Positions 1,624 through 64,000 of a stretch of 64,000 nt of DNA are shown in pieces. The stretch is taken from positions 8,174,448 through 8,238,447 of the forward strand of contig BDGG01000002.1 of assembly GCA_001949185.1 (NCBI GenBank), read 5' to 3'. Source of the stretch: Ramazzottius varieornatus. Taxonomy: Eukaryota; Animalia; Tardigrada. Made by a program: the position numbers and the translations under genes. Each line of letters opens with the position of its first letter. Position 1 is the first letter of the stretch. The notes beneath the pieces were generated by a model that was not told where the DNA came from, did no database searches, and saw nothing but the letters and a program-made list of their open reading frames with translations.

Positions 1624-4600
1624 AACACAAGGAAGCCTCGGCGCCCGCCTTTACGCAAAAGCTGTTATCAAAAGTTGTACGACAAGGACAAAACGTCTTA
1701 TTTGAAGGACGGATTGTGGGCAACCCAGTCCCTCAAGTGACCTGGTACCACAACGGGCATCTTATAACCTCGGGAGGAAGATTTTGTATCACCCGCAGTG
1801 GAGACCTTTGCCAGCTACTTATCTCCCACGTCGAACACCGCGACGCCGGAGCAGTCAAAATATCAGCCTTGAACAAAGGCGGAGAGGCCATTTGTATCGC
1901 TGACCTTCTTGTAGCACCCGCTGACAGCGACCTGCCGCCAGTTGACACGCGTGAGCAGCACCCACATGCTCTATCGCACAACCTGCTCTACCTGAAATTT
2001 CCTTCCATCGAGACCGAAAGCGACCAGCAAAACAACATGGTAAGCAATACAGCATTCCGTATCTGTACGAAGCCTGTTCTAAGCGTATTTGAAGATATTA
2101 ATTTTTGTGAATATTTGGATTTTATGCTGTTTTATAAACAATAGACGTGCGAAGTGGTGCCGTCGGTACGTATCTTGAAGTGCAAACGACAAGGATCTCT
2201 TGCACCCGAGCCTTAAAAAAGCATTGCAGGGGAAGTTTGATAGAAAAGTTTGATCCATTTTGATAGAAAACCAATGGATTGATGGGTGATATGAGAGCCC
2301 GTTTGTTGTGGAAACTACGTGGTTTCCTGTTGTCTTAATTTTTGTCTCTTGTGTATTCGAAACAGTCCCCGCATCGGCGACGCAAGAGTTTCGAGGCAGG
2401 GAAGCACGGAGTAAAAAATTGAAACAATAGTTTATCTCTTCCTGGTATTCATATGACGCGTCTCAATTTAGGCCGGAATCTCCTGATGGTTTATCTGAAA
2501 TACAACACAGAAATTTTGAAAGGATTCCAAAAAGGTTTATGGACGATTGCAAGAACTGTGGAAGAGTATCTTAAGCTTGAAGCCTTGAAGAGCGCCTTAA
2601 AGTACCGGTAACAGTGACATATATTTTTGCAAAGTTTCTAGAAAATTATGAGAGCGAGCCTTCAAGTCTTAAAGAGCACCTCGAAGTATCGATAACTGCC
2701 TGATTTGGTCTGTTCAGTTTTCGAAGAAGAATGCGATTGCGGTACCAGATTGATCACCTCAGATGGATGGTGCTTTCGGAAAACAAATAAGGAAATTGGA
2801 AAGAAAGCGGGGTTTGGCGTCAAAGCGGCTAGAATGCAAGAAGGCTTTACCAGAAGACTGTTTACGTGTGCAGCGTTCGCTGGAATTGGTTATCGTGTAA
2901 ATATTGACAGTCTGATCGACGCTGGAAGTGTTAAGACAGAATGACGTACGCGATCTTTCGAACCTTCTTCCTTGTTCCTGCAGGCTTCCGCAATGCGGCC
3001 ACCGTCACCTGGTCGACCTTCGGGCATTCCCATGCGCGCCCCGCCCTTCTTCACGCGGACACTGCGTCCCTTGAACGTTATGGAAGGTTCGACGCTGGTG
3101 ATAGAATGCAGCGTCCAGGCTCACCCACAGCCAACTATTCGCTGGTTGCATAACGGCCAAGAATTGTCCACCACCAACGACTCAAGAATTCAGCAAACTA
3201 TCTTCCCTAATGGCACCTGCACTCTCCAAATCACTGATGTGCGTCTCTCCGACGCTGGCCAATACATTTGTCATGCCAGCAACCAAATGGGCAAACGACA
3301 AAGCGCCACCTTCGTTGTCGTCGAAGGTGAGCCTCTCTCATTCAAAATTCTACCCGCAAAAACCTGGGGGAACTCCTCCAACAGATCAAGCGATCTAACT
3401 TTCTCCATTAGCCATTTCTTCCTGCTAACCATTATTTTTTTTACCAAGAGGAGTGCAGTGACAGAATTTTTAACACGCCCAAAAAGCTTCAGCAGGTCGT
3501 TGTCTCAAATGGCGCACTCTCTTGTTCAATAACAATGAAAGGGAGAGCCACTTCAGATTACCATCTGGCGTGACGTTCTGCCAACATCCAATTTTTCGCC
3601 TGATTTTCTGCCTGTTTAGTATCTGTTCGTGATTGTTTTCCGAGGTAGACTTATCTGATTCTGGCTTCTTTGTCCGGAGTGTAGCTGGCACTTGGAGTTC
3701 GGACGTTCCATCAACTTCCTCGGGTGTTCCCTCTGGTGAGCGACAGTTGCCTCCCAGTCCCACCCTGTCAATGAAAAGCGGAATGAAACCCAAGTTTGTC
3801 AGTCTGCCACGAAGTGCCCAGCTTAACGTCAATAGCACGGCTTACTTTGAATGCAAAGTCAGTGGTGTTCCTGCGCCGGCTGTAGTCTGGAGTCGTCTGG
3901 GTCAGCATCTGCAGGATCCCTCCAAACACATCATCACTGTTGACGCACACAGCGGCGTCCACAGCCTGCAAATACTCAATGTTAAACCCGAAGACGAAGG
4001 CCAGTATCACTGTACCGTCTATAACGACTTTGGCGAAGAATCTACAGCTATCTTTCTCCTCACTCCGGGTAAGAGAAAACATCCCAGAATGTTAACGTAC
4101 AGTATTGATATTTTCAAATTCAGAAACAGTTGATTGCTTCACGCCGTTGACTGGCCAAACCTTCAACAATGGCCTTCCGAGTTGCTTTGTCTTCTCTCTC
4201 AATTTTCTGAACGGTTGTCCTACGAATACAATAGGTCCTGAGCTAATAATAAGCACTTCCGATACCCTAATAAGATCATTTACCTTCCGCAGAGAAATTT
4301 GCAGAGTGGACGCGTCAAGAGCGAAAGCGTCGTCCCTCGCTGACTCGCGGTATGTCCCCCGGTCCATCTCCACGACAATCCCCGGTCCCGGAATACAGCA
4401 GCAAGCGTCTAAGGAGTCGTCCCGTCAGTGCCGATTCCCGTTTGTCCGCGGAGCGCGATACCTATTCAATGGAGATATCAGAAGTTAACGATAATTTAAG
4501 CCGCCGGCTTCCACCGGTTGCTTACCGTCCACAATCAGCGCCTCCGCCCGTCGCGCGACGTCCCGCCTCCATGACTAGCCAGCCCAGCGAGATGGAGATC

Positions 4601-6274: not shown

Positions 6275-9200
6275 GTAAGCTTACATTTTTGTATGATATT
6301 TCCAGAGCAGTTGAATTCACCTAGAGCTTTTTTCTGTTGCAGCAAAACCAAAGTTGATCGAGGCCACCACTTCCGCTGCTCATCACTACGCCGCAGCCAG
6401 AGTGCGCGAAGCTCCAAAGCGTCGCTTTTCTCCGGAACGCGGTCCTGAGCAAGTGGAGCCAGTGGAGCTCCGCCATGTACCAAAGCATCCGCGATCCTCC
6501 TCCTTCTCGGGAGGCATCTCGCCAAGTCCGGTTTTTGACGTTCGACCGCCGGCTCCAACCCAACCACCTCGCTTCACTTCCCTTCTTCGTAACATTGACT
6601 GTGACGAAGGCCATCGTGCTCGTTTCGAATGTGTTACCAGCACTGCGGCAGAAACAGACGTTGCAGTCGAATGGTGAGCGATCATTTTACTAACATCATT
6701 ATGCAGTGAGATCGTGCGAAGTAAATGATTGGGCGCTTTGCAGAGACGAAGGTAAACCAGATCAGCTTTCTCAAGTGGCGCACGCTTCCACTCACCTACA
6801 ACGAGAACTGCGCCACTTCGGAGGAAAGCAGACTGCACGCCATCGTTTCCCAAGTGGCGCGCGCTCTCGACCAATAACAATGCTGACGCGCGCCAGTTGG
6901 AAAAACAATCTTGTCAAGATTGTTTTATCCCAAGTCGCGCACGTTTGCATTGGTATTAGTAGGGCGGTATTGGTTAAAAATAGGCGTCACTTAAGATCAT
7001 TAACTTAAGTGACGCAAGCTGCCAGTTGATAGATAATAAGAACGTGCGCCACCTAAGATAGTAATCTGGGCGAACTCGTTTCCCGACGTCCCGATTTAAA
7101 CTTTAATTTGGTTTCGCTGCAGGTTCAAGGATGGAGTACCTCTTCGCCTCAGTCCACGTCACCGTACTACCGAGAACTTTGGTATGTACGGTCTGGACAT
7201 CCTGGCAGTGTCCGCCGAAGATGCGGGCATATACACTTGCCGAGTGGTTAACGCCATCGGTGATGCCGCCACTTCCGCAACGATGAACTTCCGGCCTCGG
7301 CAGCAAATGACACCAACGCCGACGGGACTCCAACGTTCATCTCTCCGTCCTTCTATCAAGGAACCACTAAAGAAGCGATACGACGTCAACATCGACGAGT
7401 ACTTCGAGGCATACGTCGTCATTGATGCCGTCGATGAGCAAAGCTTCTCTTTCCAGTGGGTCCACAATGACCAACCAGTTATTCCCGGTATGGAATAACC
7501 ACTAAAATTTGACACTAGAATATCCAAAGTAGGCTATCGTACAGTAATTTGGTTTTAACAACCCATACCAGCTAAATGTTTTACGGCAGACGAGATGTAC
7601 AAGATCGTAACATGAAGTGGCACACCGTTTCAGCCAATAACAACGACAACGCGCGCTACTTGAGGCCGCGAGCCTTTCCTTTGCCGGCCTCCCATAGACA
7701 GTCATAAAACCTATTCCGATGTACACGCGCGCTGTTTTCTTTCCAGATGACAGAGTTCGAGTGGAGTACCAGAACGGGAAAGTGACAATACGCATTATGA
7801 AAGTGGAGTCGCGCGATGCCGGTGTTTGGATCATCAAAGTCAATAATCGTTTCGGTGAGAGCTGTAGTGCGACCAGCTTGGTAGTCAATCCACCTGGCTC
7901 CACGCCGGCCTCTCCCCACACTCCACGACAACCGGCTTTTGTCTCGCAACCCAGCGAAACTGTTTACGAAGACGAGAACAATACTCTCTTCATTGAACTG
8001 AAAGTCTCACCTTCCAACGCCAAAGTGGTCTTCTTCAAAGATGGCCAAGTTCTCACTGACTCTTCTCACATCAAAACGGTATCGAACTGGTTTTTCGCAC
8101 TATTCAGACCATTAGGCGTGGTATGAACTTTGTTCTTGTGTTCTTGCAGGTGACGGACCGTGGCTACGGTATCTTGGAGATCAACGTTGCCGGTCGCGAA
8201 GATACCGGGACGTACACGTGCCGAGCCAGTACCACCATGGGCTCCGTCGATACCACTTTCCACATCAACGTCCGCGAGCGAGAGCCAGCTTACCGCTCGA
8301 CCATGCCGACTATCCACATTGCTCCGTCTGACTCTGTTGTCGAAGAGGGAACCGTCGCTAGATTCTACTGCACCGTTACTGGTGTCCCTCTGCCCAGAGT
8401 CTCTTGGCGGTTGAATGGACAGCACATTACCACGGTGAGTTTGGTGCTCTGCAAACAGACTCAAAAAGATTATTCTTCCTATTGGCGCACGTTTGCACCG
8501 TTAGTGCACTTGAAAAAAGAGCCCCTTTGATGTTGCGCACCTTTTCAATGTTATTGGCTAAAACAGTGCGCCACTTAGGAGAACAATCGTCTTCCCAAGT
8601 CTCTCGTTTGACAATTCGTACTAGAGGTTATCACTGCAATATGTATCTCGTTGCAGGGAGAGCGATTCAAGCTGACCGGAGACAACTTCACCAGCAGCCT
8701 GGAAATCAGCCACACTCGGCAGTACGATTCCGGTGAGGTAACGGCGGTGGCTGAGAACTCAGAAGGCACTTCCACTGCACGAGCTCGCCTAACTGTAACG
8801 CCTCGCATGGCCGACATGGCCTCACGAGACTTTCCTCCCCAACCTGAGCCCGTTCGATCACCTAGTCAAGCTCTTCCTGCTAAACCCGCTTTGAAACGCC
8901 TAATTTCTCACAAGGCTCTTAACACGCATGACCAGCAACCCATAGTCACCGAGCGTTTGCAGCCGTGTCGCGTAGCCAGCGGTCAACCCGCGCGTTTCAC
9001 TTGTCAATTTCATAGCATAACCTCCACCCGCATTGAATGGTTCCGTGATAACATCAAAATTGAACCCTCGCCCGACTTTCAAACTAATGTCACCGACACC
9101 TCAGCCACCCTGTTGATGCCTCAAGCCTTTGTCGAAGACTCGGGCAACTTCACGGTCAGAATCAGCAACGAGTACGGCGTCACGGAAAGCACGGCCACCT

Positions 9201-54200: not shown

Positions 54201-57200
54201 GTTGAGAAACTAAAGACCGAGGTGGAGTACACGTTCCGCGTGAAAGCCGTCAACAAAGTCGGCCCAAGTGACACGGCGCAAGCCGAAGGAACCTTCCGAC
54301 CAACACCAGCTAAGCCACAAGGAACGGCGCCGAAAGTGACGCCCGTCGAAGAAACCTCGTTGACTATCAAAGCGTTGGAAGGTCAGCCGATAAGCGCAGT
54401 GTTCGACGTGACAGGCCAGCCGACTCCCACCGTCACATGGACCAAGAATGGTAAAGTGATCAAATCCAGCGAAGATCGTCGGCTGACAGTGGAAGACGGT
54501 AAAGCCACCATGACCATCGAGCATGCCGAGCTGCTGCATTCAGCGACCTACACTGTGGAAAGCACCAACCCGTTGGGAAGTGACAAGGCGACGTTCGCTG
54601 TGATAGTTCAAGCGCCTCCTACAGTGACAGCTGATCAAGTTGAACATAAAGTGGTTTTTGAAGAAACTTGCACCATGAAGGTAATTTCCCGCAACAAGCT
54701 GGAAGCAAATTCGACACTATTGTTTTCCCAAGTGGCGCACATCTTCAGTGTTATCAGCTGAAAGCGTGCGACCCGATCTTGGCGACTTTGTTCGTCTAGA
54801 TTCTGACTGGTATACAAGTGAAAAAATCTTAATTCGTAATTGGTTTCCGTACAGGTTAAATTCAACGGTGTACCGCCACCCACCATCAGCTGGACGAAAG
54901 ACGACAAGCCCGTCGTAGTTGACCGTCGAACACAGATCGACACCAACGGAGCCAGCTCGAAGTTGACCATCAAGAAAGTACAGCCGGACGACCAAGGCAC
55001 CTACGAAGTGACAGTCAGTAGCGAAACCGGTCAAGCTACCGTCTCCATGTCCCTGGCGGTCTCTTCTGCCCCGTCTGCACCAAGCGGTCCGCTGACCGTC
55101 AGCGACATAACCGACACCACCTGTAAGATCACCTGGGGACCCCCAGAAAGCGACGGCGGCCAGCCACTGACCGAGTACGTCATCGAGAAGCGTGATGTAA
55201 GGAAGACGACGTGGGTCCGCGTCAAGACGGTCAAGACCGACGTCACAAGCACCACAGTGGAAGGACTGCTGGAAGGCGTTGATTATTTGATCCGAGTCAG
55301 TGCCGTCAACAAAATCGGCACCAGTACGCCTCTGGAAACCGACAAGCCCGTCACACCCAAGAGCCAATTTACGGTGCCGTCTGCCCCAGTCGGACCGTTG
55401 ACGTCTTCCGACATTACGACCGAGTCGGTCACGCTGAGCTGGCAACCACCAGCCAGTACCGGTGGCCAACCCTTGCTTTCCTACACCATCGAAAGGAAGG
55501 AACATCTGAAGCGAGCCTGGACGAAAACGGCGGTAACGGAAGGCAACATGACAAGTTTCACCGTCAAGAAACTGACGGAAGATACCGAGTACGAGTTCAG
55601 GGTGTTGGCCGTCAACAGCAAAGGCCCCAGCGAGCCGCTGACGACAGAGAAGACGGTCAAAACCCGACGAGCGCTACAAGCCCCAGGTGCACCAGCGCCA
55701 CCTGTGCGAGCCACAGCCACCTCAGAGACGCTGGTCTTTGAATGGTCACCACCAACGGAGAACGGAGGCGCCCCCTTGACGGAATACGAAATTGTGATCA
55801 CAGACGTCACGACTGGCAGTAGCAAGACCAGAACGACGAAACCCTACGAGACATCGTACGAAGTGACAGATGTCAAGGTTGAGCATACTTACGTGGCGGA
55901 AGTTAGGGCGGCTAATAAGGTTGGCAAAGGACCATCGACCAAGTCCGATGAAGTGACGGTACTGGGTAAAGTGCAACCGCCATCGTCACCTAGTGGTCCC
56001 CTGACCGTCGACCAAGTCGGCGACAGCGCCGCGACGTTAGCCTGGCAGCCACCTGAGTCGGATGGCGGAGCTCCTGTAACCAACTACCTGATCGAAGGAC
56101 AGGATAACGTCTCCAAGAAGTGGTACTTGATGAAAGACAGAGCGGCCGCAGAGCTCACGCTCCGGACTGACAAGCTGGAAGAGGACCGAGAGTACCAGTT
56201 CCGCGTCTCCGCCAAGAACGTCGCCGGTATCAGTAGGCCACTTGAGACCAACCAGCCATTCCGCCTGCGCAAGCCCACACAACCTGAAGGACAGGAAACT
56301 AACCTGACGGATGTCCTGCATGTTATTGATGCTACACGGACCTCTGTCGATCTAGAATGGGACAAGTACGAAGCAACGCCTGATCAAGAAGAGCCCATCA
56401 CCTATCGCATCTACAAGCGAAACTCGGGTCGAACCACCTGGATAAAAGTGACAGAGACTATCGAGCGACGGGTGAAGGTAAAGGACTTGGACAAGAATAC
56501 CGCATATGACTTCAGCGTATCAGCTGTGGCCAAAGACGAGAAGGAGAAGCCTCTCTTCGCAGTGTCGGACGTCCACACCAAAGACACCGGTAAGTATCTC
56601 ACTAATTGGAAGCTCGGGAAACAAACTCTGTCACATGGTTTTCCAAAGTGAAACATGCAGCCAGCCAATGTCACCGACAACGTGCGCCGGTTTGGAAAAA
56701 ACAATCACACGTGAACAGGACTTTATTCTAAGTGGCGCACGCTATAAGCCAAAAGCCTCGACAATATGGGTCACTTCAGGAAACGATCTTGTCGCGTTTG
56801 CCGGCCGAGATTCCAGTTATAATATTACTGTAATGCTTCTCCAACTTCGCGAAACACGTCATAATACGCGCGGAACATCTCCCGGGGGTTGGTAGGGTAT
56901 AGTCACCGGACCAGCGTTTAACTCCACGAGTACAATCACGTGATTCGCGAAGTTCAAGAAGCACTACAGTAGTTTTATATATTGATTAGTTTTGATGGAT
57001 TTGTTATTATAGAAGCGCCATCGGCACCTGAGAACACTATCCTGACTACCGACGCGGAAGGCCATCCCGTGCTGGAATGGAAAGCTCCAGCGGACGATGG
57101 TGGCGCCGACGTAATCGGCTATCACATTCACTTGCGTCACAGTGGTTCTACCACCTGGAAGAAGATCTCGACACAAGTCATCCGCAAGTGTCGTTATGTG

Positions 57201-60200
57201 GTGGACAACCTCAAGGCCGGTGACGAAGCCGATGCCCAAGTGACGGCGGTCAACGAGAAGGGCGAAGGCCAACCCAGTCGACCACCCGTCCACATCGTCA
57301 TGCCGGAAGCCCAAAAGCCCAAGGAGCTGCCACCCGGCATGGAAGCCCCCACTATCACAATCCGCAGGCCCCTTATCGAGGTACCTTTGAGTGACTCATT
57401 CACGGTCGAAGCCGCCTTAACTGGTTTACCTTACCCCACAACGCAATGGAAATTCAACGATACCGCCATCACTGAAACCCGAAGAATCAAAATCGAAGAA
57501 CGCAAGACAATCAAGACGGTCAAGTTGACAAACAGCAAGTCGGAGACCACCGACAGCGGAACATACACCATCACGGTTAGTAACCCCGCGGGAGACGCTA
57601 CCGCCACCGTCACAGTCAAGGTCCTGACCAAGCCTGGTCTGCCAGCTTCCTTGGGGCTCGACCAAGTCACCAGCGACTCTGTCAAGCTGATCTGGACAGC
57701 GCCCGAAGACGACGGGGGCAAACCTGTCAAGTCGTACATCGTCGAGAAACGTCTGGCCAACAAAACGCTGTGGACCAAGGTGGAAACGACAACGAATACC
57801 GAAGTCACTGTTACGAAGCTGACCAAAGGCACGGCTTACCATCTGAGAGTGAGAGCAGTGACTGACCAGGGAGAAGGACCCAATGCCGAAGTGGGACCTA
57901 TCACACCGGGTGAAACGGTACCTGAGGAGAAACCGCTGACAGTCGAGGAAGAGAAATTACCAGAGGAGAAAACGGGAAAGGTAGCGCCAGGTGAAACTGT
58001 GGAACCAAAGACGGTGAAGAAGAGCCTGGGTGAAACAGCACAGAAGCCAACTTTGAGCTTCCAGGACGAACAAGTGGAAGCCAAAGAAGGCCAGCCGATC
58101 AAGTTGGCGGTTAAGTATACCGGAACACCAACGCCGCAGATTAGTTTTTACCATGAGGATGAAGCCAAGCCATTGACGCCATCACGAAAGGTCCAGATTG
58201 AAGATCGACCGAAAGAGTCAACCGTTACGTTGACTATTCCCAAAGCGGAAGTGACGGATGCCGGAACTTACACTGTCAAGGCCCACAACGCCGAAGGTGG
58301 GTTAAATGAACTGTGCTATGAATCAAAAACGAAATCGGCAAACAACAGCAAGATTGCTTCCCAGGTGGCGCACATTTTTGGCGTGCGCCACTTGGAGGAA
58401 CTTAACCAGATTGTTTGCCCGAGTGGCGCACATTTTCCGTTTCACGGGCTAGCGGCGTGCGCCACTTGGGAAAATGATCTTGTTGTGTGGGTTTGCTGAC
58501 CTCCCGAAAATGATTATAAACAGTTTCCAGTAAATTTAATTTTCCATTTCAGGCGACGAGCTGGCGACGGCCAGCGTAGTCGTTTTATCCAAGCCATCCG
58601 TACCAGAGCGCTTGGCGGTTTCGGACGTGACGGATACGTCGGTAACGCTGACATGGGATGCACCAAAGACCCTGGGTGACGACCAGACCAAAGTTAAGTA
58701 TACCGTGGAACGACGAGCTGCCAACAGAACTGTCTGGCAGAAAGTGACCACCACGAAAGATACGAAATTGACGGTGGAGGACTTGAACAAAGATACCAAG
58801 TACCATTTCCGCGTTACTGCGGAGAACCCACAGGGACAAAGCCAGCCGGTGGAAGTTGGTCCCATTGCCACCGAAGCAGTCAAACCAAGTATGTGTTAAA
58901 TGACGGGAGGACGGCACACGCGCAAGATCGGGCTCCCAAGTGGCACACGTTCTCGCTGTAGTGAACTGGAAGAGTGCGCCACTGGAGAACGTCATGTCAA
59001 GCGGCGCATGTTTCCATTGCTAATGCCTTGTAATGTGCGCCACCTAAGATCTCAGTCTTGCGCATTTCATCTGCCGCCTTCCCAAACCACGATGCATTCA
59101 TCGGTTAGACTTTTGATTATCACATATCTCTCTTTTAACAGCAGTGAAAGCGCCGAAGGAAAAGTCGCCGGTATCAAACGTACCGGAATCTTTACCGATC
59201 GAAGAAAAGGACTTGCCTGACATCATCGAGCTCATCCAGACACCCAAGCCAGAGCGCCGTGATGAGACCTTAGTTGCCCCAACTGTCAAGTTCCAAGCCG
59301 CAGAAGTAACGGTAGCCGAAGGTGAGCCCATCAAGCTGAAGGTAACTTACTCCGGAACACCAGCACCGAAAGTTCACTTCTATCACGACGACGAGACCAC
59401 TCCACTGACGGCTTCTCGAAGACTCAAGATCGACGAATCACCCAAAGATACTTCCGTCACGCTGACCATCCCGAAAGCCGAAGCTCCCGACGCGGGAACG
59501 TACACGGTGAAGGCTATGAACGAGCAAGGCGAGGAAGTAGCCACAGCTAGTATAACGGTCCTGTCAAAGCCGTCAATGCCCCAAGATGTGGCAGTGACTG
59601 ACATGACGAACACATCCGTGACGCTGACCTGGAAGGCACCAGCTATTCCAGGGGATGACCAGAAGAACGTCAAGTATGTGGTCGAACGAAGGGCAGCTAC
59701 GAGGACGATATGGCAAAAAGTAACGACCACGAAGGAGACCACGGTGACGGTGGAAGAGTTGAGCAAAGGCACTAACTACTACTTCCGCGTCCGAGCGGAG
59801 AACCCACAAGGCCAAAGTGAGCCCGCGCAGATTGGACCTATCGAAATTCAAGCACAACCGCAAGGTACGTCAGCTGAGACGATTTTATTTCCTGTAGGGT
59901 TTTAAACTCAGTTGATGACTTGATTCTAGAAGAAAAGCCCCTTGAACAAAAAGTATTAACTGCGGAAGTGAAAGAAGAACCGAAAGTCAAGCCAGCCAAA
60001 ACAGAGCAAGTCATGACGGAAGAACCTGGAAAGAAGGAGAAATCAGTAGAGGCTCAAACTGCGGCAAAAGCCACCGAAGAGAAAGTCAAGCCCGTAGAAG
60101 CAGAGGTGGCGCCAACGGTAACGCTCAGTAAGTCTGACATTACAGCCAGCCTGAAAGAAACCGTCAAGATAACCGCCACGTACACGGGCAAACCTCGTCC

Positions 60201-63200
60201 CACCATTACCTGGCTGAAAGACGGTTCACGGCTCGCCCCTTCTCGAAACATCTCAGTGGAAGATCGTGTGCGTGCTAATGTATCCGTTCTAACCCTCACT
60301 AACCTCACTGCTGAAGATGCCGGTGTGTACACTGTCTCGGCTGACGACGTGACAGCTGAATGCATGGTGAAGGTCCTGCGACCGCCCGGAAAGCCCACCA
60401 ACTACTCGGTCAGCGATGTGACACAGGACAGTGCAACGTTGAGCTGGGACGCTCCTACCGACGATGGAGGCGAACCGGTCAAACAGTACATCATCAGAAA
60501 GAAGGTAACGGGTAAGACTACCTGGACCAAAGTTACCACCAGCAGAGAACGAAAAGTGGTGGTGAAGGACTTGACCAAGGGTACGTCCTACGACTTCAGC
60601 ATCTCTGCAGAAAATCCACAAGGTACGGTACAGTAGATGAACTGGAACCTTAGCCTTCGAGAAGATCGTTTTCCTAGGTGGCGCATGTGTCTAGCCATTT
60701 GCGCCGAATACATGCGCCACTTGGCAGAACAGTCTTGAAGTGTTTGTTTGCCGAGCTTCCATCTAACGTTGGCTAGAAGTTTTATGTAACATTTCACTTG
60801 GCCTCAAGGCGAAGGAACACCGCTGGAGATTACCGGTATCACAACAAAGCCCGAAGAGCCCCTTGTCAAACCAACCAAGCCACAAGTCACACCTTCCCTG
60901 ACCATCAGCCGAGCCGATCAAACGGTCAAGCTTGGCAAACCCGTCGATATTGATGTTACCTTCACCGGAGAGCCTCGCCCTAAAGTCACCGTCTACTTCA
61001 ACGATGTCGAAGTCACCACGTCCCGTCGTGTCAAGCTAGAAGAAGCCAGGAAAGAGCCCCGAGCCACATTCACCATCACCCAGACCGAGCTGACCGACAG
61101 CGGCAAGTATACCATCAAGGCCACCAACGACGCGGGAGTGACCACAGCCGAGTTCACTCTACGGGTAGTCACAACGGCCAGTCAACCCAGAGAACTGACC
61201 GTGACGGAGATTACGACGACTAGCGCGACCATCAGCTGGAAGGAGCCTGAAAGCGACGGCGGAAGTCCAGTTACAAGTTACGTTGTACTGAAACAAACGT
61301 CGGGTGGACCGTGGCAGAAAGTGACCACGGTCAAGGCTACGGAAAGGGGTTGCGCGATCAGAGATCTGCTGCAAAAGACCAAGTACTACTTTCGGGTTGT
61401 GCCTGTCACGGATCAAGGTGAAGGACAGCCCGCGGAAGTTGGACCAGTAACTGCCACCGGTAAGTAAGGCTGTGCAACTGCAAAAGTGCGCCACTTGTAT
61501 AACAATCAAACTGGACAAGATTATTTTTCCTGTGGCGCACCCTATCGAGTTGTTACAATTAAGGCGTGCGCCACTTCAGATAGCGATCTGGGTGAAGTCT
61601 TTTGCCGATGTTCCATCTCCAAACAGTATTTGAATTAACTCAATTTGATTTTTCTATTCGCAGAAATCACGAAAGAAGCTCCAGCACCTATTCAGCCAGC
61701 GCTAAAACCCGTAGAACCGACCAAAGCCATTCCAGAAACCGTTCCGACTATCACCCTATCCAAGCCAGCCGAAGCCATCACGGTCGGTTCGCCCTTCGAC
61801 GTCGACTTTACTATCAGTGGCCATCCCAAAGCGGAAGTGACCTGTTACCACAGCGATGCAGTCTTGAAAGAAAGCCGACGAGTTACACTGAAAGAGCGTC
61901 ACACTGGAAAGTTCACCCTGAGCATCACCAAGGCCGAAATGAGCGACAGCGGAACGTACAGGATCGTCGTCAAAAACCGCAACGGCGAAGCCGAAGTGGA
62001 ATTCACGCTAAAAGTCCTGTCGAAACCCACAGCGCCGGAGAGTCTAACAGCCACCGAGATCACTTCTCAATCCGTCACGCTAACTTGGACAACACCAACG
62101 GAAGATGGTGGCAAGCCGTTGACACACTACACGGTCTACAAACGAGTGACGACAAGAACTGTCTGGCAGAAAGTCACTCGCGTCACATCGACCACCACCT
62201 CGGTAACGGTGGAGGAACTACAAGCTAGCACCGCTTACGACTTTTACGTCACAGCCCAGAATGAAATTGGCGAGAGCGAAGGCGCCGAACTCAGCCGCAT
62301 CCGAACTGAAGAAGCGAAGAAGCCTGAGAAGGTGGCGCCACGAGGATCCGTTGATAAAGGTGATAGACGTAAGCCATCGTTGGTGCCCGCCGAAGAGAAG
62401 GAAACGCTGGTCACACCAACTATTCATCTGAGCAAGAGCAACGTAACAACGACCATCAACCAGCTTGTTCAAATATCGGTTACCTTCTCGGGAGAACCAC
62501 GCCCGAAGCTGACGGTGTACCATAACGATGTCCTGATCGACACGGTGGCATCGCGTCATTATCAACTGGACGAACGTCGACATGATATGATGGCCACGTT
62601 TAGCATCACAAGAACGGAGCTGAGTGACACCGGAACCTACAAGATCAAAGCTACTAGCCCTGCTGGAGAAACTAGCGCTGAATTTACTCTAAAGGTAAAT
62701 AGAAAAATGCCCTTGTTTGAGCCTAAAAAGTAGAAACCAGTCTCCTGCATCATGGCTGACATGCACAGGTTACCATGATTTCTATGTTTTTTTGCAGGTT
62801 TTGACCAAAGCCGGCCCTCCAACTCAAGCCTCCGCTACCGACGTTACTACCGCCAGTGCCACCATAAGCTGGCAGCCTCCTACACAAGATGGTGGCTCGC
62901 CCATCAAGCAGTACATTATTGAGAAGAAGGTGTCCACTCGCTCAACGTGGATTCGAGTAACGACCACCAAGACCACGGAAGTGACCATTACCGAGCTGAA
63001 CGAAGACACCAGCTACGACTTCCGCATTCGAGCAGAGACGGACTATGGCGAAGGGGAGAATGCCGAGTTGGTGAATGTCAAGACCAAAACTGTGGAGATC
63101 AAGAAGGAAGTGAAGGTAGTCGAGACGAAGAGAGAGCAAGGACCAGCTGCGACGACGCCAACAGTTACCATCAGTAAATCCAGCATCTCAGTGGGAACTA

Positions 63201-64000
63201 ATCAGATGATGCAGGTTGATGTCTCGTTTACTGGTCAACCACGACCGCAGTTGACGTGGAGGCATAACGGAGCGGTACTAGAGATGACGCGTCGTGTCAC
63301 CATTGAAGAACGACGAACACAAATGGTGGCCACTTTCACCATTAAGAAGACGGAACAGACTGATGCCGGAACTTACACCGTTACAGCCAAGAATGACCAC
63401 GGTGAGGCTTTGGCTAATCTAACTCTGGTAGTCTTGGATAAAGCTGGACCGCCAAGGAACTTGACCGTCAGAGAAGTGACGCCCAAGACGGCAGGGCTGA
63501 CATGGGAAGCCCCGTTGACCGATGGTGGAGCACCTGTTAAACATTACTTGGTGGAAAAGAGAAGTGCCGGAAGGACCACATGGACCAAGGTGACCACTAC
63601 CCAAGAAATGAAGGCTGTTGTCACCGAGCTTGTGCAAGGAAACAAGTTCGAGTTCCGCGTTAGAGCTGTCACCGACCAGGGCGAAGGAGCAGAAGCGCAA
63701 GTTGGACCTATTACCGCTGACTACACTTTCGGTCAGATAACAGGGAGCTCGGCCAAGAAACTGCGCAAGCTCGTCATCTCCAGTGGCGCAGGCTTTCGGC
63801 TAACAACATTGACAAGCTCGCCACTTGGGATAACAATCTTGTCGAGTTTGTCTGCCGAGCTACCAGTAGCGTTCAATCTTTGACATTTGCGATGTTCGGG
63901 CTCATTTACGCTTTCCCTATTTACAGATGTTCCATCAGCACCGGCAGCTCCTTCAGTCAGCAACGTTACTTCCAAGACTGTAACCTTAACCTGGCTCCCA
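1624..64000 (+). CDS. Titin/connectin-like (kettin/sallimus-type) giant sarcomeric protein; 66 exons traced; 3' incomplete
   Basis: Successive + strand ORF pieces carry I-set Ig motifs (P-x-F...G-x-P-x-P-x-V-x-W...D-x-G-x-Y-x-C), PEVK-like low-complexity tracts and Fn3 motifs (W-x-x-P-x-x-D-G-G, Y-x-F-R-V-x-A-x-N). They join in frame across 65 GT-AG introns with matching phases. Exact orthology (TTN vs sls/kettin vs TTN-1) cannot be fixed without a search. Confidence 0.93.
6343..12272 (+). CDS. N-terminal Ig block, Ig7-Ig16
   Basis: Exons 6343-6673, 7123-7487, 7747-8078, 8150-8434, 8657-9287, 9623-10015, 10222-10410, 10483-10707, 10781-11344, 11674-12096, 12189-12272. Split Ig domains are rebuilt across the junctions (e.g. 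VE-W|FKDG). Confidence 0.9.
6745..7092. repeat. Intronic hairpin family, ~4-unit composite
   Basis: Repeated CAAGTGGCGCAC/GTGCGCCACTT-like arms near 6772, 6852, 6932 and 7005. Confidence 0.85.
7583..7692. repeat. Intronic hairpin family, single unit
   Basis: CGGCAGAC..CAAGATCG..AAGTGGCACAC-loop(CCAATAACA)-GCGCGCTACTTG..TTTGCCG. Confidence 0.8.
8443..8605. repeat. Intronic hairpin family, 2-unit degenerate
   Basis: TGGCGCACG and GTGCGCCACTT arms; loop in the TGTTATTGG orientation. Confidence 0.75.
9370..9565. repeat. Intronic hairpin family, 2-unit
   Basis: GGCGCACG..CGTGCGCCACT, then ACTCGACAAG..CAAGTGGCGCATG..CATGCGGCACTT..CTTGTCGAGT. Confidence 0.85.
11369..11627. repeat. Intronic hairpin family, 3-unit composite with outer inverted termini
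   Basis: Starts AGCTCGGAAAA and ends TTTGCCGAGCT, enclosing three core hairpins. Confidence 0.9.
12308..12418. repeat. Intronic hairpin family, single unit
   Basis: CAAGATC..CCCAAGTGGCGAACG..CGTGCG..TTTTGCCGAGCTC. Confidence 0.8.
12496..20111 (+). CDS. Low-complexity region I: Gln-rich and ESPQPEMAELDYY-motif exons
   Basis: Exons 12496-13163, 13412(or 13424)-17603, 17955-19391, 19678-20111. Includes the 1422-aa ORF. Confidence 0.85.
13220..13360. repeat. Intronic hairpin family, 2-unit
   Basis: AAGTGGCGCACG..TGCGCTACTTG; CAAGTAACGCACG..TGCGCAACTTG..CGATCTTG. Confidence 0.8.
17720..17920. repeat. Intronic hairpin family, 2-unit
   Basis: TCGGCAAATGAA ... TTCACTTGCCGA outer arms with two inner cores. 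Confidence 0.8.
19477..19606. repeat. Intronic hairpin family, single unit
   Basis: CAAACAAACTCAACCAGATCG..CAAGTGGCGTA..CGTGCGCCACTT..TTGTTTGCCG. Confidence 0.85.
20105..20222. repeat. Intronic hairpin family copy overlapping the 5' splice site
   Basis: CCG|GTAAACAAACTCCACTAGATT resembles the consensus left arm TCGGCAAACAAACTCGACAAGATC. Confidence 0.75.
20277..25474 (+). CDS. Low-complexity region II: Glu/Thr/Val/Pro-rich exons
   Basis: Exons 20277-20711, 20892-21672, 21923-22845, 23145-23870, 23929-24960, 25186-25474. Confidence 0.85.
20751..20863. repeat. Intronic hairpin family, near-consensus single unit
   Basis: CAAACTCGACAAGATCGTTTTCCGAAGTGGTGCAC..CGTGCGCCACTTGGAAAA..TTTGCCGAGCTC. 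Confidence 0.9.
21780..21895. repeat. Intronic hairpin family, single unit
   Basis: TGGCGCACG..CATGCGCCACTTGG..TGTCGAGCTTGTTTGC. Confidence 0.8.
22885..23099. repeat. Intronic hairpin family, 2-unit with G-U-compatible outer stem
   Basis: GGGACGTGGGC pairs with GCCCGCGTCTC; two inner cores. Confidence 0.85.
24989..25115. repeat. Intronic hairpin family, single unit
   Basis: TCAAGTGGCGCACG-TTTCCAGCCAATAACGATAAGAG-CATGCGCCACTTGA. Confidence 0.9.
25545..25841 (+). CDS. Isolated I-set Ig domain exon inside the PEVK-like region
   Basis: 297-nt phase 1-1 exon encoding PVVKKPLE...LQCQFDVQP..ATWFHED...IAEVFPEDAGLYVC...VTVE. Confidence 0.9.
25880..26123. repeat. Intronic hairpin family, 2-unit
   Basis: Loop CATTGTTATTGG plus TGCGCCACTTGGGAAAAC; second core TTTTCCCAAGTTGCG..GCCACTTG. 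Confidence 0.8.
26150..31136 (+). CDS. Low-complexity region III: giant Thr/Glu/Val/Pro-rich exon(s)
   Basis: Exons 26150-26347 and 26432-30781 (or one 26150-30781 exon if the 84-nt in-frame intron is retained), then 30847-31136. Confidence 0.85.
26563..26589 (+). repeat. (ACC)9 coding microsatellite (poly-Thr)
   Basis: Direct read; encodes the TTTTTTTTT run. Confidence 0.9.
31190..31250. repeat. Intronic hairpin family, core only
   Basis: AAAGTGGTACAC..GTGCGCCACTTT. Confidence 0.75.
31288..43797 (+). CDS. Low-complexity region IV: EFPxPExAE(L/V)D(F/Y)-motif exons
   Basis: Exons 31288-32410, 32494-32871, 32961-33476, 33552-33893, 33967-34602, 34872-35533, 36257-38942, 39026-39403, 39482-39997, 40081-40704, 40765-41192, 41272-42024, 42137-42821, 42931-43797. 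Confidence 0.85.
32221..32845 (+). repeat. Copy 1 of a 625-bp identical internal duplication (exon end, intron, exon)
   Basis: Matches 38753-39377 at offset 6532, including the 83-nt intron. Confidence 0.93.
34630..34827. repeat. Intronic hairpin family, 2-unit
   Basis: Outer arms GATTTCACCCAGATCG / CGATCTGGGTGAAATC are perfectly complementary. Confidence 0.88.
36150..36228. repeat. Intronic hairpin family, core with expanded (GACAAC)n loop
   Basis: AAGTGGCGCACG..GACAACGACAACGACAA..CGTGCGCCACTT. Confidence 0.85.
38753..39377 (+). repeat. Copy 2 of the 625-bp identical internal duplication
   Basis: Matches 32221-32845; the ORF-track translations are identical over this span. Confidence 0.93.
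43964..46513 (+). CDS. Exon carrying the 68-aa tandem repeat array
   Basis: CCGTAG| acceptor and GATG|GTAAGA donor; 2550 nt, phase 1-1. Confidence 0.85.
44008..46214 (+). repeat. Coding tandem array, 204-bp unit x ~10.8
   Basis: The same text recurs at 44041, 45061 and 46081 (multiples of 204). Only two variable positions seen. Confidence 0.97.
46726..51873 (+). CDS. Isolated Ig followed by Lys-containing PEVK-like region
   Basis: Exons 46726-46808, 46869-48404, 48464/48467-48694, 48952-50343, 50429-50566, 50631-51873. Ig motif APKFTTEV...VHGIPQPSVTWY...GTITCVASN; K content rises toward 3'. Confidence 0.85.
48740..48925. repeat. Intronic hairpin family, 2-unit
   Basis: AACTCGACCAGATC..GTGTGCCACTTGG..AACTCGACAAGATCG..CAAGTGGCGCAC..TGCGCCACT..TTTGCCGAGCT. 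Confidence 0.88.
51936..56589 (+). CDS. Ig x3 - Fn3 x3 - Ig x2 - Fn3 x5 block
   Basis: Exons 51936-52326, 52563-52972, 53179-53946, 54181-54680, 54855-56589. Canonical Fn3 motifs (WxxPxxDGGxP, YxFRVxAxN). Confidence 0.9.
52363..52504. repeat. Unrelated intronic inverted repeat (21-bp arms)
   Basis: AAACAGAAATCAGGCATCTTC (52363-52383) vs GGAGACGCCTGATTTCTGTTT (52484-52504). Confidence 0.75.
52987..53107. repeat. Intronic hairpin family, single unit
   Basis: GAAGTGGC..CGTGCGCCACTTG..GATCTTGT. Confidence 0.75.
53957..54145. repeat. Intronic hairpin family, 2-unit
   Basis: AGTGGCGCAC..GTGCGCCACT; AGCGCACG..CGTGCGCT. Confidence 0.85.
54697..54800. repeat. Intronic hairpin family, single unit with right-arm deletion
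   Basis: TTTTCCCAAGTGGCGCAC..CGTGCG..GATCTTGGCGACTTTGTT. Confidence 0.8.
56608..56814. repeat. Intronic hairpin family, 2-unit
   Basis: AGCTCGGGAAACAAACTC ... CGATCTTGTCGCGTTTGCCGGCCGAG. Confidence 0.82.
56828..56969. mobile_element. Unrelated 142-bp MITE-like element with ~48-bp TIRs and TA flanks
   Basis: TA|CTGTAATGCTTCTCCAACTTCGCGAAACACGT ... ACGTGATTCGCGAAGTTCAAGAAGCACTACAG|TA. Confidence 0.75.
57013..64000 (+). CDS. Fn3 followed by ~8 [Ig-Fn3-linker] modules; runs off window
   Basis: Exons 57013-58296, 58553-58888, 59142-59864, 59930-60622, 60809-61459, 61664-62694, 62798-63731, 63927-64000. Confidence 0.9.
58333..58506. repeat. Intronic hairpin family, 2-unit
   Basis: Two GTGGCGCAC/GTGCGCCAC cores inside CGGCAAAC..GTTTGCTG arms. 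Confidence 0.88.
58905..59083. repeat. Intronic hairpin family, 2-unit
   Basis: Outer arms GGGAGG.CGGCA..GCGCAAGA / TCTTGCGC..TGCCG.CTTCCC. Confidence 0.85.
60640..60760. repeat. Intronic hairpin family, single unit with compensatory changes
   Basis: CTAGGTGGCGCATGTGT / ATACATGCGCCACTTGG. Confidence 0.88.
61470..61615. repeat. Intronic hairpin family, 1.5-unit
   Basis: Orphan GTGCGCCACTTG, then a full GTGGCGCAC..GTGCGCCAC core and TTTTGCCG end. Confidence 0.82.
63743..63863. repeat. Intronic hairpin family, single full-length unit
   Basis: GAGCTCGGC...CAGTGGCG..CGCCACTTG...CTTGTCGAGTTTG.CTGCCGAGCT. Confidence 0.88.

What the first reader, a model, noticed from the sequence alone, without database searches (positions are those of the whole stretch)
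3475..63863. One palindromic hairpin family occupies 29 of the 36 longer introns of this gene and none of the short ones
Seen: a ~115-bp element with by-eye consensus GAGCTCGGCAAACAAACTCGACAAGATCGTTTTCCCAAGTGGCGCACG-[~22-nt loop, often CAGCCAATAACA or its reverse complement]-CGTGCGCCACTTGGGAAAACGATCTTGTCGAGTTTGTTTGCCGAGCTC. It recurs in introns starting at 3327, 6674, 7488, 8435, 9288, 11345, 12273, 13164, 17604, 19392, 20112, 20712, 21673, 22846, 24961, 25842, 31137, 34603, 35534, 48695, 52973, 53947, 54681, 56590, 58297, 58889, 60623, 61460 and 63732. Copies are highly diverged, but the GTGGCGCAC/GTGCGCCAC core is preferentially kept, and I see no consistent target-site duplication. Established: MITEs/foldback elements are short inverted-repeat elements and often intronic. 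Inference: near-saturation of small introns by a single family is unusual. It suggests either an intron-tolerated or intron-targeting mobile hairpin, or a domesticated structured RNA element of pre-mRNA processing.
Basis: partly seen in the sequence, partly recalled or inferred. Interest (0 to 1): 0.9.

Follow-up and report, generated by a model that had tools for sequence, protein, structure and literature searches.

The report
Ancient palindromic repeat lodged in introns
A decayed ~119-bp palindromic mobile-element relic, present some 13,000-18,000 times in this tardigrade genome, landed 46 times in the short introns of a titin-like gene and simply makes those introns long; the hairpin is not maintained, but a central pair of 10-bp motifs at fixed spacing is unexpectedly well kept.

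Summary
"None of the short ones" is a size tautology, because a 119-bp element cannot fit in a 60-90 nt intron. With the element bases removed, these introns have a median of 82.5 nt, against 78.5 nt for element-free introns. So long introns are ordinary short introns plus 1-4 independent insertions.

The family is genome-wide: about 0.24 copies per kb, about 2.4% of a 55.8-Mb assembly whose metrics match Ramazzottius varieornatus. It is old, with arms about 35% diverged, best genome-wide relatives 75-83% identical, and no detectable target-site duplication. A crude annotation puts it about 4-fold denser in introns than in non-genic DNA. It also clusters in distal contig domains, one of which holds this window.

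It is not an introner, since splice sites lie outside the element in 28 of 29 introns. It is not a maintained RNA structure either, since arm pairing has decayed freely.

One real oddity remains. The central inverted 10-mers and their 27-nt spacing are far better conserved than the termini (752 against 7 intact pairs), in introns and non-genic DNA alike.

Other first-stage readers flagged the same family in six other windows of this genome.

The parts
2763..64000 (+). Host gene: a giant titin/sallimus-like gene. It has Ig domains at about 3-12 kb, a PEVK-like E/T/P/V-rich region at 13-46 kb, and Ig/Fn3 domains at 46-64 kb. It runs off the window's right end, and its 5' end was not settled.
   Evidence: Pfam I-set and fn3 hits on single exons. 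The best relatives are titin/twitchin proteins. Gene models come, and spliced RNA contigs.
3327..3619 (.). Intron (the 3' end is model-only) with 1 copy at 3469-3568.
   Evidence: nhmmer 38 bits; sequence read.
6674..7121 (.). 448-nt intron with 4 adjoining copies: 6734-6852, 6842-6925, 6914-6996 and 6972-7100. 81 nt remain without them.
   Evidence: an RNA contig resumes at 7122.
7488..7746 (.). 259-nt intron with 1 copy at 7575-7695.
   Evidence: the splice junction is seen in RNA contigs.
8435..8656 (.). 222-nt intron with 2 copies: 8438-8506 and 8535-8616. 71 nt remain without them.
   Evidence: the splice junction is seen in RNA contigs.
9288..9622 (.). 335-nt intron with 2 copies: 9356-9477 and 9452-9569.
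   Evidence: the splice junction is seen in RNA contigs.
11345..11673 (.). 329-nt intron with 3 copies: 11363-11477, 11452-11534 and 11511-11635. 56 nt remain without them.
   Evidence: RNA contigs end at 11344 and resume at about 11675.
12273..12495 (.). 223-nt intron with 1 copy at 12302-12421.
   Evidence: the splice junction is seen in RNA contigs.
13164..13411 (.). 248-nt intron with 2 copies: 13207-13283 and 13282-13370.
17604..17954 (.). 351-nt intron with 2 copies: 17712-17821 and 17793-17926.
19392..19677 (.). 286-nt intron with 1 copy at 19490-19612. This is one of the best remaining hairpins (z = -6.4).
20112..20276 (.). 165-nt intron with 1 copy at 20110-20209. It is the only intron whose donor GT lies inside the element: terminus GGCAAAC reads GTAAAC here.
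20712..20891 (.). 180-nt intron with 1 copy at 20751-20870, the best-scoring copy in the window (98 bits). 60 nt remain without it.
21673..21922 (.). 250-nt intron with 1 copy at 21771-21903.
22846..23144 (.). 299-nt intron with 2 copies: 22877-22999 and 23006-23106.
24961..25185 (.). 225-nt intron with 1 copy at 24984-25121.
25842..26149 (.). 308-nt intron with 2 copies: 25884-26004 and 26020-26126.
31137..31287 (.). 151-nt intron with 1 truncated copy at 31181-31244.
34603..34871 (.). 269-nt intron with 2 copies: 34631-34738 and 34732-34833.
35534..36256 (.). 723-nt intron (model only) with 1 copy at 36122-36254, near its 3' end. This copy has a long spacer (31 nt between the 9-mer cores, against 25).
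48695..48951 (.). 257-nt intron with 2 copies: 48733-48811 and 48816-48932. There is no intron at this position in the relative's contig L028.
52973..53178 (.). 206-nt intron with 1 copy at 52988-53081.
53947..54180 (.). 234-nt intron with 2 copies: 53952-54071 and 54065-54143. There is no intron at this position in L028.
54681..54854 (.). 174-nt intron with 1 copy at 54701-54808. There is no intron at this position in L028.
56590..57012 (.). 423-nt intron with 2 copies (56602-56699 and 56702-56809) plus one copy of a second, younger palindromic family at about 56826-56971. L028 has a frame change, and so probably a short intron, at the matching place.
58297..58552 (.). 256-nt intron with 2 copies: 58342-58396 (short form) and 58394-58508.
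58889..59141 (.). 253-nt intron with 2 copies: 58897-58995 and 58986-59072.
60623..60808 (.). 186-nt intron with 1 copy at 60655-60766.
61460..61663 (.). 204-nt intron with 1 full copy at 61502-61618 and a fragment at 61470-61506. There is no intron at this position in L028.
63732..63926 (.). 195-nt intron with 1 copy at 63744-63866. Both termini are still recognisable.

Best explanation
The element is a relic of a non-coding, palindromic MITE/foldback-type DNA repeat. Its consensus is about 119 bp: 55-nt inverted arms around a 9-nt loop.

It amplified long ago to roughly 13,000-18,000 copies in a 55.8-Mb genome. By its assembly metrics that genome is the tardigrade Ramazzottius varieornatus.

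Copies that landed in exons were lost. Copies that landed in the tolerant middle of pre-existing short introns stayed: downstream of the donor, and at least about 19 nt upstream of the acceptor. Each copy lengthened its intron by about 119 nt.

The titin-like gene has about 60 short introns and lies in a repeat-rich distal domain of its contig. It therefore collected 46 independent insertions in 29 introns. These introns are still spliced normally from their own splice sites.

Shown here:
- family membership and copy number
- the intron arithmetic
- independence of the copies
- old age of the family
- decay of the hairpin
- splice sites lying outside the element

Inferred: mobility by a DNA-transposon-like route, and retention through selection against exonic and regulatory insertions.

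One further point is shown but not explained. The two central inverted 10-mers (AAGTGGCGCA and its complement) and their 27-nt spacing evolve about three times more slowly than the rest of the element.
For: Family and abundance:
- The core count is 28 in the window against 0.59 expected.
- The strict core pair occurs at 752 genomic sites, with reversed-pattern controls at 0.
- A random 200-kb sample holds 48 copies, or 0.24 per kb and 2.4% of bases. The window has 0.72 per kb.

Intron arithmetic:
- Element-free introns have a median of 78.5 nt. Element introns minus element bases have a median of 82.5 nt (Mann-Whitney p = 0.48).
- Copies per intron are near-Poisson: mean 0.78, variance 0.91.

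Splice sites outside the element:
- The 5' flank ranges from 3 to 108 nt and the 3' flank is at least 19 nt, with a relative position of 0-0.84.
- Only intron 20112 has its donor inside the element.
- Four element-bearing introns are spliced out in RNA contigs.

Independent insertions:
- Window copies are no closer to each other (0.529) than to copies elsewhere (0.534).
- Intron flanks with the element masked share no similarity.

Old age:
- Arms are about 65% identical to the consensus.
- Linkage between variable columns is nearly absent (mean r2 0.010 against 0.008).
- The best non-self genome matches of two good copies are 75-83% identical.
- Intact terminal or inner-arm 11-mer pairs occur only 7 times each.

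Hairpin not maintained.

Regional density: strict sites with a GCCAAT loop cluster at 7.38-8.95 Mb of contig C2 (8 of 12 sites). The window lies at 8.17-8.24 Mb.

Introns as a refuge: a second, younger palindromic family sits in intron 56590-57012.

Organism: 55.8 Mb in 200 contigs. The fourth contig is 4.74 Mb, which equals the published N50.
Against: - No target-site duplication and no autonomous partner could be shown, so the transposition mechanism is inferred, not demonstrated.
- The density in this gene's introns is about 6-10 times that in other predicted introns of the sample. Regional clustering explains the per-kb excess of the window, but not obviously the per-intron excess.
- The intron versus non-genic contrast rests on my own crude gene finder and only 200 kb of sample.
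- A plain neutral relic does not predict the slow-evolving central dyad.
- In the one relative available, four of six mapped element-bearing introns have no counterpart. Intron gain is therefore not excluded, although all three mapped element-free introns are missing there too.
Confidence: 0.8

Rival explanations
1. The central dyad is a working module. Two inverted 10-mers held 27 bp apart would form a binding site for a sequence-specific, probably dimeric, DNA-binding protein, such as an architectural or insulator-type factor or a domesticated transposase. The repeat would have dispersed this site, and purifying selection would then hold it at many sites. The arms would be dead transposon sequence.
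For: - In halves not used for detection, the 10-mer columns are 83-91% conserved against about 65% for every flanking column. The drop is sharp on both sides. The core CpG is kept while arm CpGs have decayed.
- Core divergence is 0.11 against 0.33 in the arms, and does not track arm divergence (rho = 0.11).
- Intact 11-mer pairs genome-wide number 752 for the core, against 7 for the termini and 7 for the inner arm.
- Spacer length: 59 of 69 copies keep exactly 27 nt. Indel events are 0.011 per nt in the spacer against 0.03 in the arms, although the spacer sequence is not conserved.
- Conservation is the same in intronic and non-genic copies.
- Core changes are one-sided, not compensatory (111 single, 4 double). 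This points to sequence-level rather than pairing-level constraint.
Against: - No binding protein is known, and no motif match could be tested. My recollection of a partial likeness to CTCF- or E2F-type motifs is untested.
- 55 of 57 motif occurrences lie inside elements, so there is no independent, element-free use of the motif.
- Selection on thousands of sites is demanding.
- An alternative remains open. If only copies with an intact core could be mobilised, long chains of source copies would conserve the core without any host function. A 1% sample of the family cannot exclude this, although the lack of close relatives argues against recent activity.
- Fewer indels in the spacer may be partly an alignment effect.
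Confidence: 0.3
2. Intron targeting. In this reading the family was not merely tolerated in introns. It inserted preferentially into transcribed or intronic DNA, or into a chromatin state typical of such genes. That preference would produce the intron excess and the hot spot in this gene.
For: - Predicted introns hold 0.71 copies per kb against 0.17 per kb in non-genic DNA in the random sample. The stricter gene finder gave 0.83 against 0.19.
- About 48% of this gene's introns are hit, against roughly 6% of predicted introns in the sample.
- Another loaded gene was seen in L009.
- Six other first-stage notes on this genome call the family intron-enriched or intron-restricted. These are unchecked AI notes.
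Against: - Non-genic clusters exist, for example L009 7028-7204 and 9311-9558.
- In a genome with about 1.1-kb intergenic distances, selection against promoter and UTR insertions could give the same pattern.
- The family is too old for insertion sites to be told apart from retention.
- My annotation is crude.
- The excess per kb of window equals the regional excess, about 3-fold.
Confidence: 0.25
3. Introner-like origin. In this reading the element created these introns by inserting into exons and being spliced out.
For: - In the relative's contig L028 there is no intron at the positions of window introns 48695, 53947, 54681 and 61460, all of which carry the element. L028 also holds no copy of the family.
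- In intron 20112 the donor is made from the element's terminus.
Against: - The element never spans the intron. A median of about 82 nt of unrelated sequence surrounds it, the size of a normal intron here.
- Donor and acceptor lie outside the element at variable distances in 28 of 29 introns.
- Several introns hold 2-4 copies.
- The three mapped element-free introns (51874, 52327, 62695) are also absent from L028. Two element-bearing ones (56590, and probably 52973) are shared. The relative is simply intron-poor.
- A sizeable share of copies lies outside predicted genes.
Confidence: 0.05
4. Domesticated structured RNA. In this reading the hairpin acts in the pre-mRNA, for example by bringing splice sites together, giving rise to small RNAs, or binding a splicing factor.
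For: - The consensus folds into a perfect 55-bp stem of -107 kcal/mol.
- The copies are transcribed as part of introns.
- There is a weak excess of one loop orientation in this gene: 23 against 10, p about 0.04, and the orientation calls are poorly determined.
Against: - Pairing between the arms of one copy (0.536) barely exceeds pairing between arms of different copies (0.508).
- Median folding energy is -34.7 against -27.4 kcal/mol for shuffles. The median z is -2, and only 28% of copies fall below -3.
- There is no compensatory change in the core.
- Position within the intron is variable.
- 30 introns of the same gene do without the element.
- Non-genic copies keep the core equally well.
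- Both cores are kept symmetrically on the sense strand, 13 plus against 15 minus.
- There is no Rfam family at gathering score.
Confidence: 0.03

Closest known systems
MITEs and foldback-type palindromic DNA repeats of animals and plants (class II non-autonomous elements)
   Same: Short (about 119 bp) and non-coding. The whole consensus is an inverted repeat. There are thousands of dispersed copies, absent from exons and common in introns. Copies sit next to or inside one another.
   Different: The termini are the least conserved part and the centre is the most conserved (7 against 752 intact pairs). This is the reverse of what transposase-bound terminal repeats usually show. No target-site duplication and no autonomous partner were found.
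Introner elements (Micromonas, Aureococcus, dinoflagellates, fungi and others; recalled from my own knowledge of Huff et al. 2016 and Gozashti et al. 2022, not read here)
   Same: One repeat family is found in very many introns of unrelated positions. One intron (20112) uses element sequence as its donor.
   Different: Introners make up the whole intron and bring or create the splice sites. Here the element lies inside an otherwise normal short intron at variable positions, often in several copies, and also occurs outside genes.
Transposon-dispersed protein-binding sites (for example CTCF sites carried by rodent B2 SINEs, or E2F sites carried by Brassica MITEs; recalled from my own knowledge, not read here)
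   Same: A short motif inside a repeat is kept far better than the surrounding repeat sequence across many copies. Its dyad spacing is kept too.
   Different: No binding factor, chromatin data or motif match is available here. The motif has no detectable use outside the repeat.
Bacterial REP/BIME extragenic palindromes (analogy only)
   Same: Small palindromes in very many copies, confined to non-coding gaps of a compact genome, with a conserved core.
   Different: A different domain of life, with no sequence relation. The metagenome contigs that hold the core pair are unrelated GC-rich hairpins.

Membership tests
MITE / foldback-type class II repeat | Short, with no coding capacity | tested here: met
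   The consensus is about 119 bp, and copies span 55-138 bp of profile match.
MITE / foldback-type class II repeat | Terminal inverted repeats | tested here: met
   The left and right halves of the consensus are reverse complements, from the GAGCTCGGCAAAC end inwards. The consensus folds as one 55-bp stem. Individual copies have mostly lost the termini.
MITE / foldback-type class II repeat | Target-site duplication of fixed length | tested here: inconclusive
   The nine best-preserved copies show no shared duplication. A grid test on 52 copies gives no excess over shuffled flanks. At about 35% divergence a 2-4-bp duplication would be invisible.
MITE / foldback-type class II repeat | High copy number, dispersed | tested here: met
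   There are 752 strict sites on many contigs. A random 200 kb holds 48 copies, which extrapolates to 13,000-18,000.
MITE / foldback-type class II repeat | An autonomous element sharing the termini | not tested
No Repbase or Dfam library is available.
Introner element | The element makes up the intron and supplies or creates its splice sites | tested here: not met
   A median of 82.5 nt of non-element intron remains. The donor lies outside the element in 28 of 29 introns, and the 3' flank is at least 19 nt of unrelated sequence.
Introner element | Element-bearing introns are lineage-specific gains | tested here: inconclusive
   In L028 (56% protein identity), 4 of 6 mapped element-bearing introns and 3 of 3 element-free introns have no counterpart. 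There is no outgroup to polarise the changes.
Structured RNA family | Match to a curated RNA family | tested here: not met
   There are 0 matches at gathering score over the whole window.
Structured RNA family | Base pairs maintained through compensatory change | tested here: not met
   Arm pairing is 0.536 within a copy against 0.508 between copies. Core changes are 111 one-sided against 4 two-sided. Folding z has a median of -2.
Transposon-borne protein-binding site | Motif conserved above its flanks in unselected copies | tested here: met
   In the partner-half test the 10-mer is 83-91% conserved against about 65% for the flanks. Genome-wide counts of intact pairs are 752 against 7 and 7.
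Transposon-borne protein-binding site | A protein binds the motif in vivo | not testable with these tools
   No chromatin or binding data are within reach.

The most novel reading that the evidence does not exclude
The repeat is the vehicle of a dyad-symmetric binding site: AAGTGGCGCA, 27 bp, TGCGCCACTT. This site would be held by purifying selection at thousands of places in a 56-Mb animal genome, in introns and between genes alike. That would amount to a genome-wide network of sites for an unknown tardigrade DNA-binding protein, seeded by one ancient burst of a palindromic element.
Probability: 0.3. Interest if true: 0.7.

Novelty: new member of a known kind. Interest (0 to 1): 0.42.

Why it matters
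For this finding, the striking statistic is explained and is ordinary. In a compact genome with 60-90-nt introns, a 119-bp repeat decides which introns are 'long'.

For tardigrade genomics, a single undescribed family makes up about 2.4% of the genome. That is over half of the 4.3% reported as classified transposable elements for this species. It accounts for much of the intron length variation, and gene models and intron-size comparisons between tardigrades should take it into account.

The part worth following up is the slow-evolving central dyad with fixed spacing. If it is a protein-binding site, it offers a ready-made, genome-wide motif for looking for chromatin-organising or domesticated-transposase proteins in tardigrades. 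If it reflects a requirement for mobilisation, it points to a transposition mode that reads the centre of the element rather than its ends.

Tried and rejected
- Rfam at gathering score over the window found nothing.
All are GC-rich with unrelated perfect hairpins and no arm similarity, so they are not the family.
- Literature searches returned nothing about this family. I tried the organism with introner, MITE and palindromic-intron terms, and also the motif itself. The two genome papers and a transposon survey do not describe it.
- Protein searches with the PEVK-like exon and with an ORF of sample locus L004 gave no hits.
- My first codon model, trained on the titin-like gene, under-called genes elsewhere. 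A self-trained model over-called antisense shadows until the strands were resolved jointly. Both classifications are reported as crude.
Local tests found no duplication.
The density estimates therefore rest on 200 kb.
- Origin of the 46 copies by duplication within the gene is rejected.
- Subfamily structure as the cause of arm divergence is largely rejected. Linkage is weak, and compensatory double changes are only a modest excess, 123 of 242 against one third expected.
Full report
WHAT IS THERE

The core GTGGCGCAC occurs 28 times in the window against 0.59 expected. With one mismatch allowed, plus- and minus-strand cores pair up at a 34-nt offset in at least a dozen introns.

I built a profile from 16 such copies. 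It finds 46 distinct copies, all between 3469 and 63866.

A consensus from 72 copies is a near-perfect palindrome of about 119 bp. It has 55-nt arms running from a GAGCTCGGCAAAC terminus inwards through AAGTGGCGCAC and an inner stem (TTTCAG/CTGAAA), to a 9-nt loop, CCAATAACA. It folds as a single 55-bp stem of -107 kcal/mol.

THE HOST GENE AND THE ORGANISM

Single exons carry Ig I-set and fibronectin-III domains. The long middle exons are E/T/P/V-rich and match no family. The nearest proteins are titin and twitchin. The host is therefore a titin/sallimus-like giant muscle gene on the plus strand.

The assembly has 55,842,812 bases in 200 contigs, and its fourth contig is 4,740,345 bases. The published Ramazzottius varieornatus assembly has 55.8 Mbp, 199 nuclear scaffolds plus a mitochondrial genome, and an N50 of 4.74 Mbp. 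I take the organism to be that tardigrade. This rests on assembly metrics, not on a sequence identity test.

CHECKING THE INTRON STATISTIC

Contigs from RNA-like runs laid on 6600-12550 (5,951 letters) skip nine GT..AG introns exactly. Four of them carry the element: 7488-7746, 8435-8656, 9288-9622 and 12273-12495.

I combined these with a splice-aware dynamic-programming model for the rest. The result is 58 introns between 6.6 and 64 kb, 28 of them with the element.

Adding the intron at 3327 gives 29 of 36 introns of 100 nt or more, and none of 23 shorter ones.

The contrast carries no information, however. An intron that contains a 119-bp element cannot be short.

The informative number is what remains after subtracting the element. 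That remainder has a median of 82.5 nt, against 78.5 nt for the 30 element-free introns (Mann-Whitney p = 0.48). Long introns here are ordinary short introns plus one to four insertions.

ARE THE INTRONS MADE BY THE ELEMENT?

No, for these reasons:
- The element lies 3-108 nt from the donor and at least 19 nt from the acceptor, at relative positions from 0 to 0.84.
- The sequences between splice sites and element are unrelated among introns.
- Only one donor, at intron 20112, is made from element sequence, where the terminus reads GTAAAC.
- Copies per intron are close to Poisson.

A contig of a relative is available: an ENA metagenome contig with 56% protein identity, fetched as L028. It holds no copy of the family.
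- It has no intron at the positions of four mapped element-bearing introns (48695, 53947, 54681, 61460).
- It also lacks the three mapped element-free introns (51874, 52327, 62695).
- It appears to share the positions of 56590 and probably 52973.

The relative is therefore intron-poor overall. With no outgroup, this neither supports nor excludes gain.

GENOME-WIDE PICTURE

The strict core pair (11 + 11 bases, 20-30 nt apart) occurs at 752 sites, and the reversed-pattern controls give 0.

Twenty evenly spaced 10-kb stretches hold 48 copies, which is 0.24 per kb and 2.4% of bases. The window has 0.72 per kb. Two of the 48 sample copies are strict sites. Both routes give roughly 13,000-18,000 copies.

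I had no annotation, so I wrote a crude gene finder.
- The strict version puts 23 copies in predicted introns (0.83 per kb) and 24 elsewhere (0.19 per kb).
- The permissive version, with the two strands resolved jointly, gives 0.71 per kb in introns, 0.17 per kb in non-genic DNA and 0.08 per kb in 'exons'. The last are probably false exons.

The family is therefore intron-enriched about 4-fold but not intron-restricted. Clusters such as L009 7028-7204 and 9311-9558 lie outside any predicted gene.

The 91 strict sites with a GCCAAT loop are strongly regional. On contig C2, 8 of 12 lie at 7.38-8.95 Mb. On C3, 14 of 20 lie at 4.1-5.3 Mb. The window is at C2 8.17-8.24 Mb, and its 3-fold excess per kb equals the regional excess.

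Per intron the gene is still richer than the sample: about 48% of its introns are hit, against roughly 6%. I cannot explain this fully.

The 46 copies are independent insertions. They are no more alike than copies from elsewhere (0.529 against 0.534), and their intron flanks are unrelated.

A run of 11 consecutive element-free introns covers 36.3-48.7 kb (p = 0.006). That stretch includes very young internal duplications.

AGE AND STRUCTURE

- Arms are about 65% identical to the consensus.
- Variable columns are almost unlinked.
- The best non-self matches of two well-preserved copies, searched against the whole genome, are only 75-83% identical.
- A second palindromic family in intron 56590-57012 has copies at 78-92% identity.

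This looks like one old burst followed by decay.

The two arms of a copy match each other hardly better than arms of different copies (0.536 against 0.508 +/- 0.008). Present copies fold at a median of -34.7 kcal/mol against -27.4 for shuffles. Nothing maintains the hairpin. There is no Rfam match. These results, together with the variable position in the intron, reject the structured-RNA reading.

THE REAL ODDITY

I used each well-matching half only to locate its partner half, and then scored the partner. This removes detection bias.
- The ten columns AAGTGGCGCA are 83-91% conserved. Every flanking column, on both sides, is at 41-78%.
- The CpG inside the core is kept (0.91/0.88). CpGs in the arms are at 0.50-0.70.
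- Per 10 nt, the core has 1.1 changes and the arms have 3.3.
- Core decay does not track arm decay.
- Core changes are one-sided (111 single against 4 double), so the sequence is kept rather than the pairing.

Genome-wide counts agree: intact 11-mer pairs number 752 for the core, 7 for the termini and 7 for the inner arm.

The distance between the two 10-mers is exactly 27 nt in 59 of 69 copies. The spacer shows about one third of the indel events of the arms, although its sequence is as diverged as the arms. Part of that difference may be an alignment effect.

Conservation is the same in intronic and non-genic copies. The motif hardly occurs outside the element: 55 of 57 occurrences lie within it.

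There are two readings.
- Constraint after insertion on a dyad binding site.
- A requirement of the core for mobilisation, acting along long chains of source copies.

The star-like decay and the lack of close relatives favour the first, but do not prove it. I give it 0.3.

COMPARISON WITH KNOWN KINDS

The family meets the MITE/foldback criteria that could be tested: size, inverted repeat and copy number. Target-site duplication was inconclusive, and an autonomous partner was not tested.

It fails the defining introner criterion and the criteria for a structured RNA.

It behaves like transposon-dispersed binding sites in one tested respect, motif conservation. Binding itself is untestable here.

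I found no description of the family in the searchable literature. No Repbase or Dfam search was possible.

Six other first-stage notes on other windows of this genome report the same family as intron-enriched, at 9-15 copies per window. That fits my genome average and marks this window as about 3-fold richer.

VERDICT

The headline statistic is explained by size arithmetic, an old abundant repeat, exon intolerance and a repeat-rich region. It is a new member of a known kind, with one unexplained and testable feature: the conserved central dyad with fixed spacing.

LIMITS

- Density by genomic class rests on 200 kb and a home-made gene finder.

Noticed in passing
window 56818-56979 (element about 56826-56971): A second, unrelated palindromic repeat of about 146 bp (57-nt arms, 81% complementary) sits in the same intron as two copies of the main family. 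The genome holds at least 40 copies at 78-92% identity, so it is a younger MITE-like family.
   Followed up: partly
window 44008-46347: An in-frame tandem array of 11 units of 204 nt (68 codons), 99-100% identical, lies inside the PEVK-like exon 43964-46513. It is a very recent expansion or is being homogenised.
   Followed up: no
window 31981-32423 and 38513-38955: A duplication within the gene, 6,532 nt apart. The 83-nt introns 32411-32493 and 38943-39025 are 100% identical, and the exon lengths 378 and 516 recur. The following stretch, 36.3-48.7 kb, has 11 consecutive element-free introns.
   Followed up: partly
window 52358-52509 (intron 52327-52562): A hairpin with 33-nt arms (79% complementary) lies in a 236-nt intron that lacks the main family. 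It is unique in the genome by DNA search.
   Followed up: partly
window 20110-20125: The donor site of intron 20112 lies inside the element. The terminus GGCAAAC reads GTAAAC here, so a repeat end may have been co-opted as a 5' splice site.
   Followed up: partly
L028 10001-12133 and 17670-20261: The relative's titin-like gene (ENA metagenome contig, 56% identity) carries in single open frames what the window splits into three exons each. Seven mapped window introns have no counterpart there, so intron turnover between the two lineages is heavy.
   Followed up: partly
G000 C2 7.38-8.95 Mb and C3 4.1-5.3 Mb: Strict copies of the family cluster in distal parts of the large contigs, and C4 (4.74 Mb) has only one. 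This suggests repeat-rich chromosome-arm domains.
   Followed up: partly
window 6842-6909 (read laying tables 5c and 7): One RNA-like run holds a contig of depth about 242 that matches an element copy only partly and runs on into other sequence. Some other copy of the family appears to sit in a highly expressed transcript.
   Followed up: no
L009 2649-6224 and 7028-9558: A random locus at C2 0.5 Mb holds 13 copies in 10 kb. Seven lie within the span of one predicted gene (five or more in its introns) and five lie in two clusters outside any predicted gene. This is another hot spot, also near a contig end.
   Followed up: no
Read-laying runs X8-X11 (organisms B-E): Runs labelled as other organisms hold contigs identical to this window, including one spliced junction (10015/10222). 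They are probably the same species under other labels, or carry-over.
   Followed up: no
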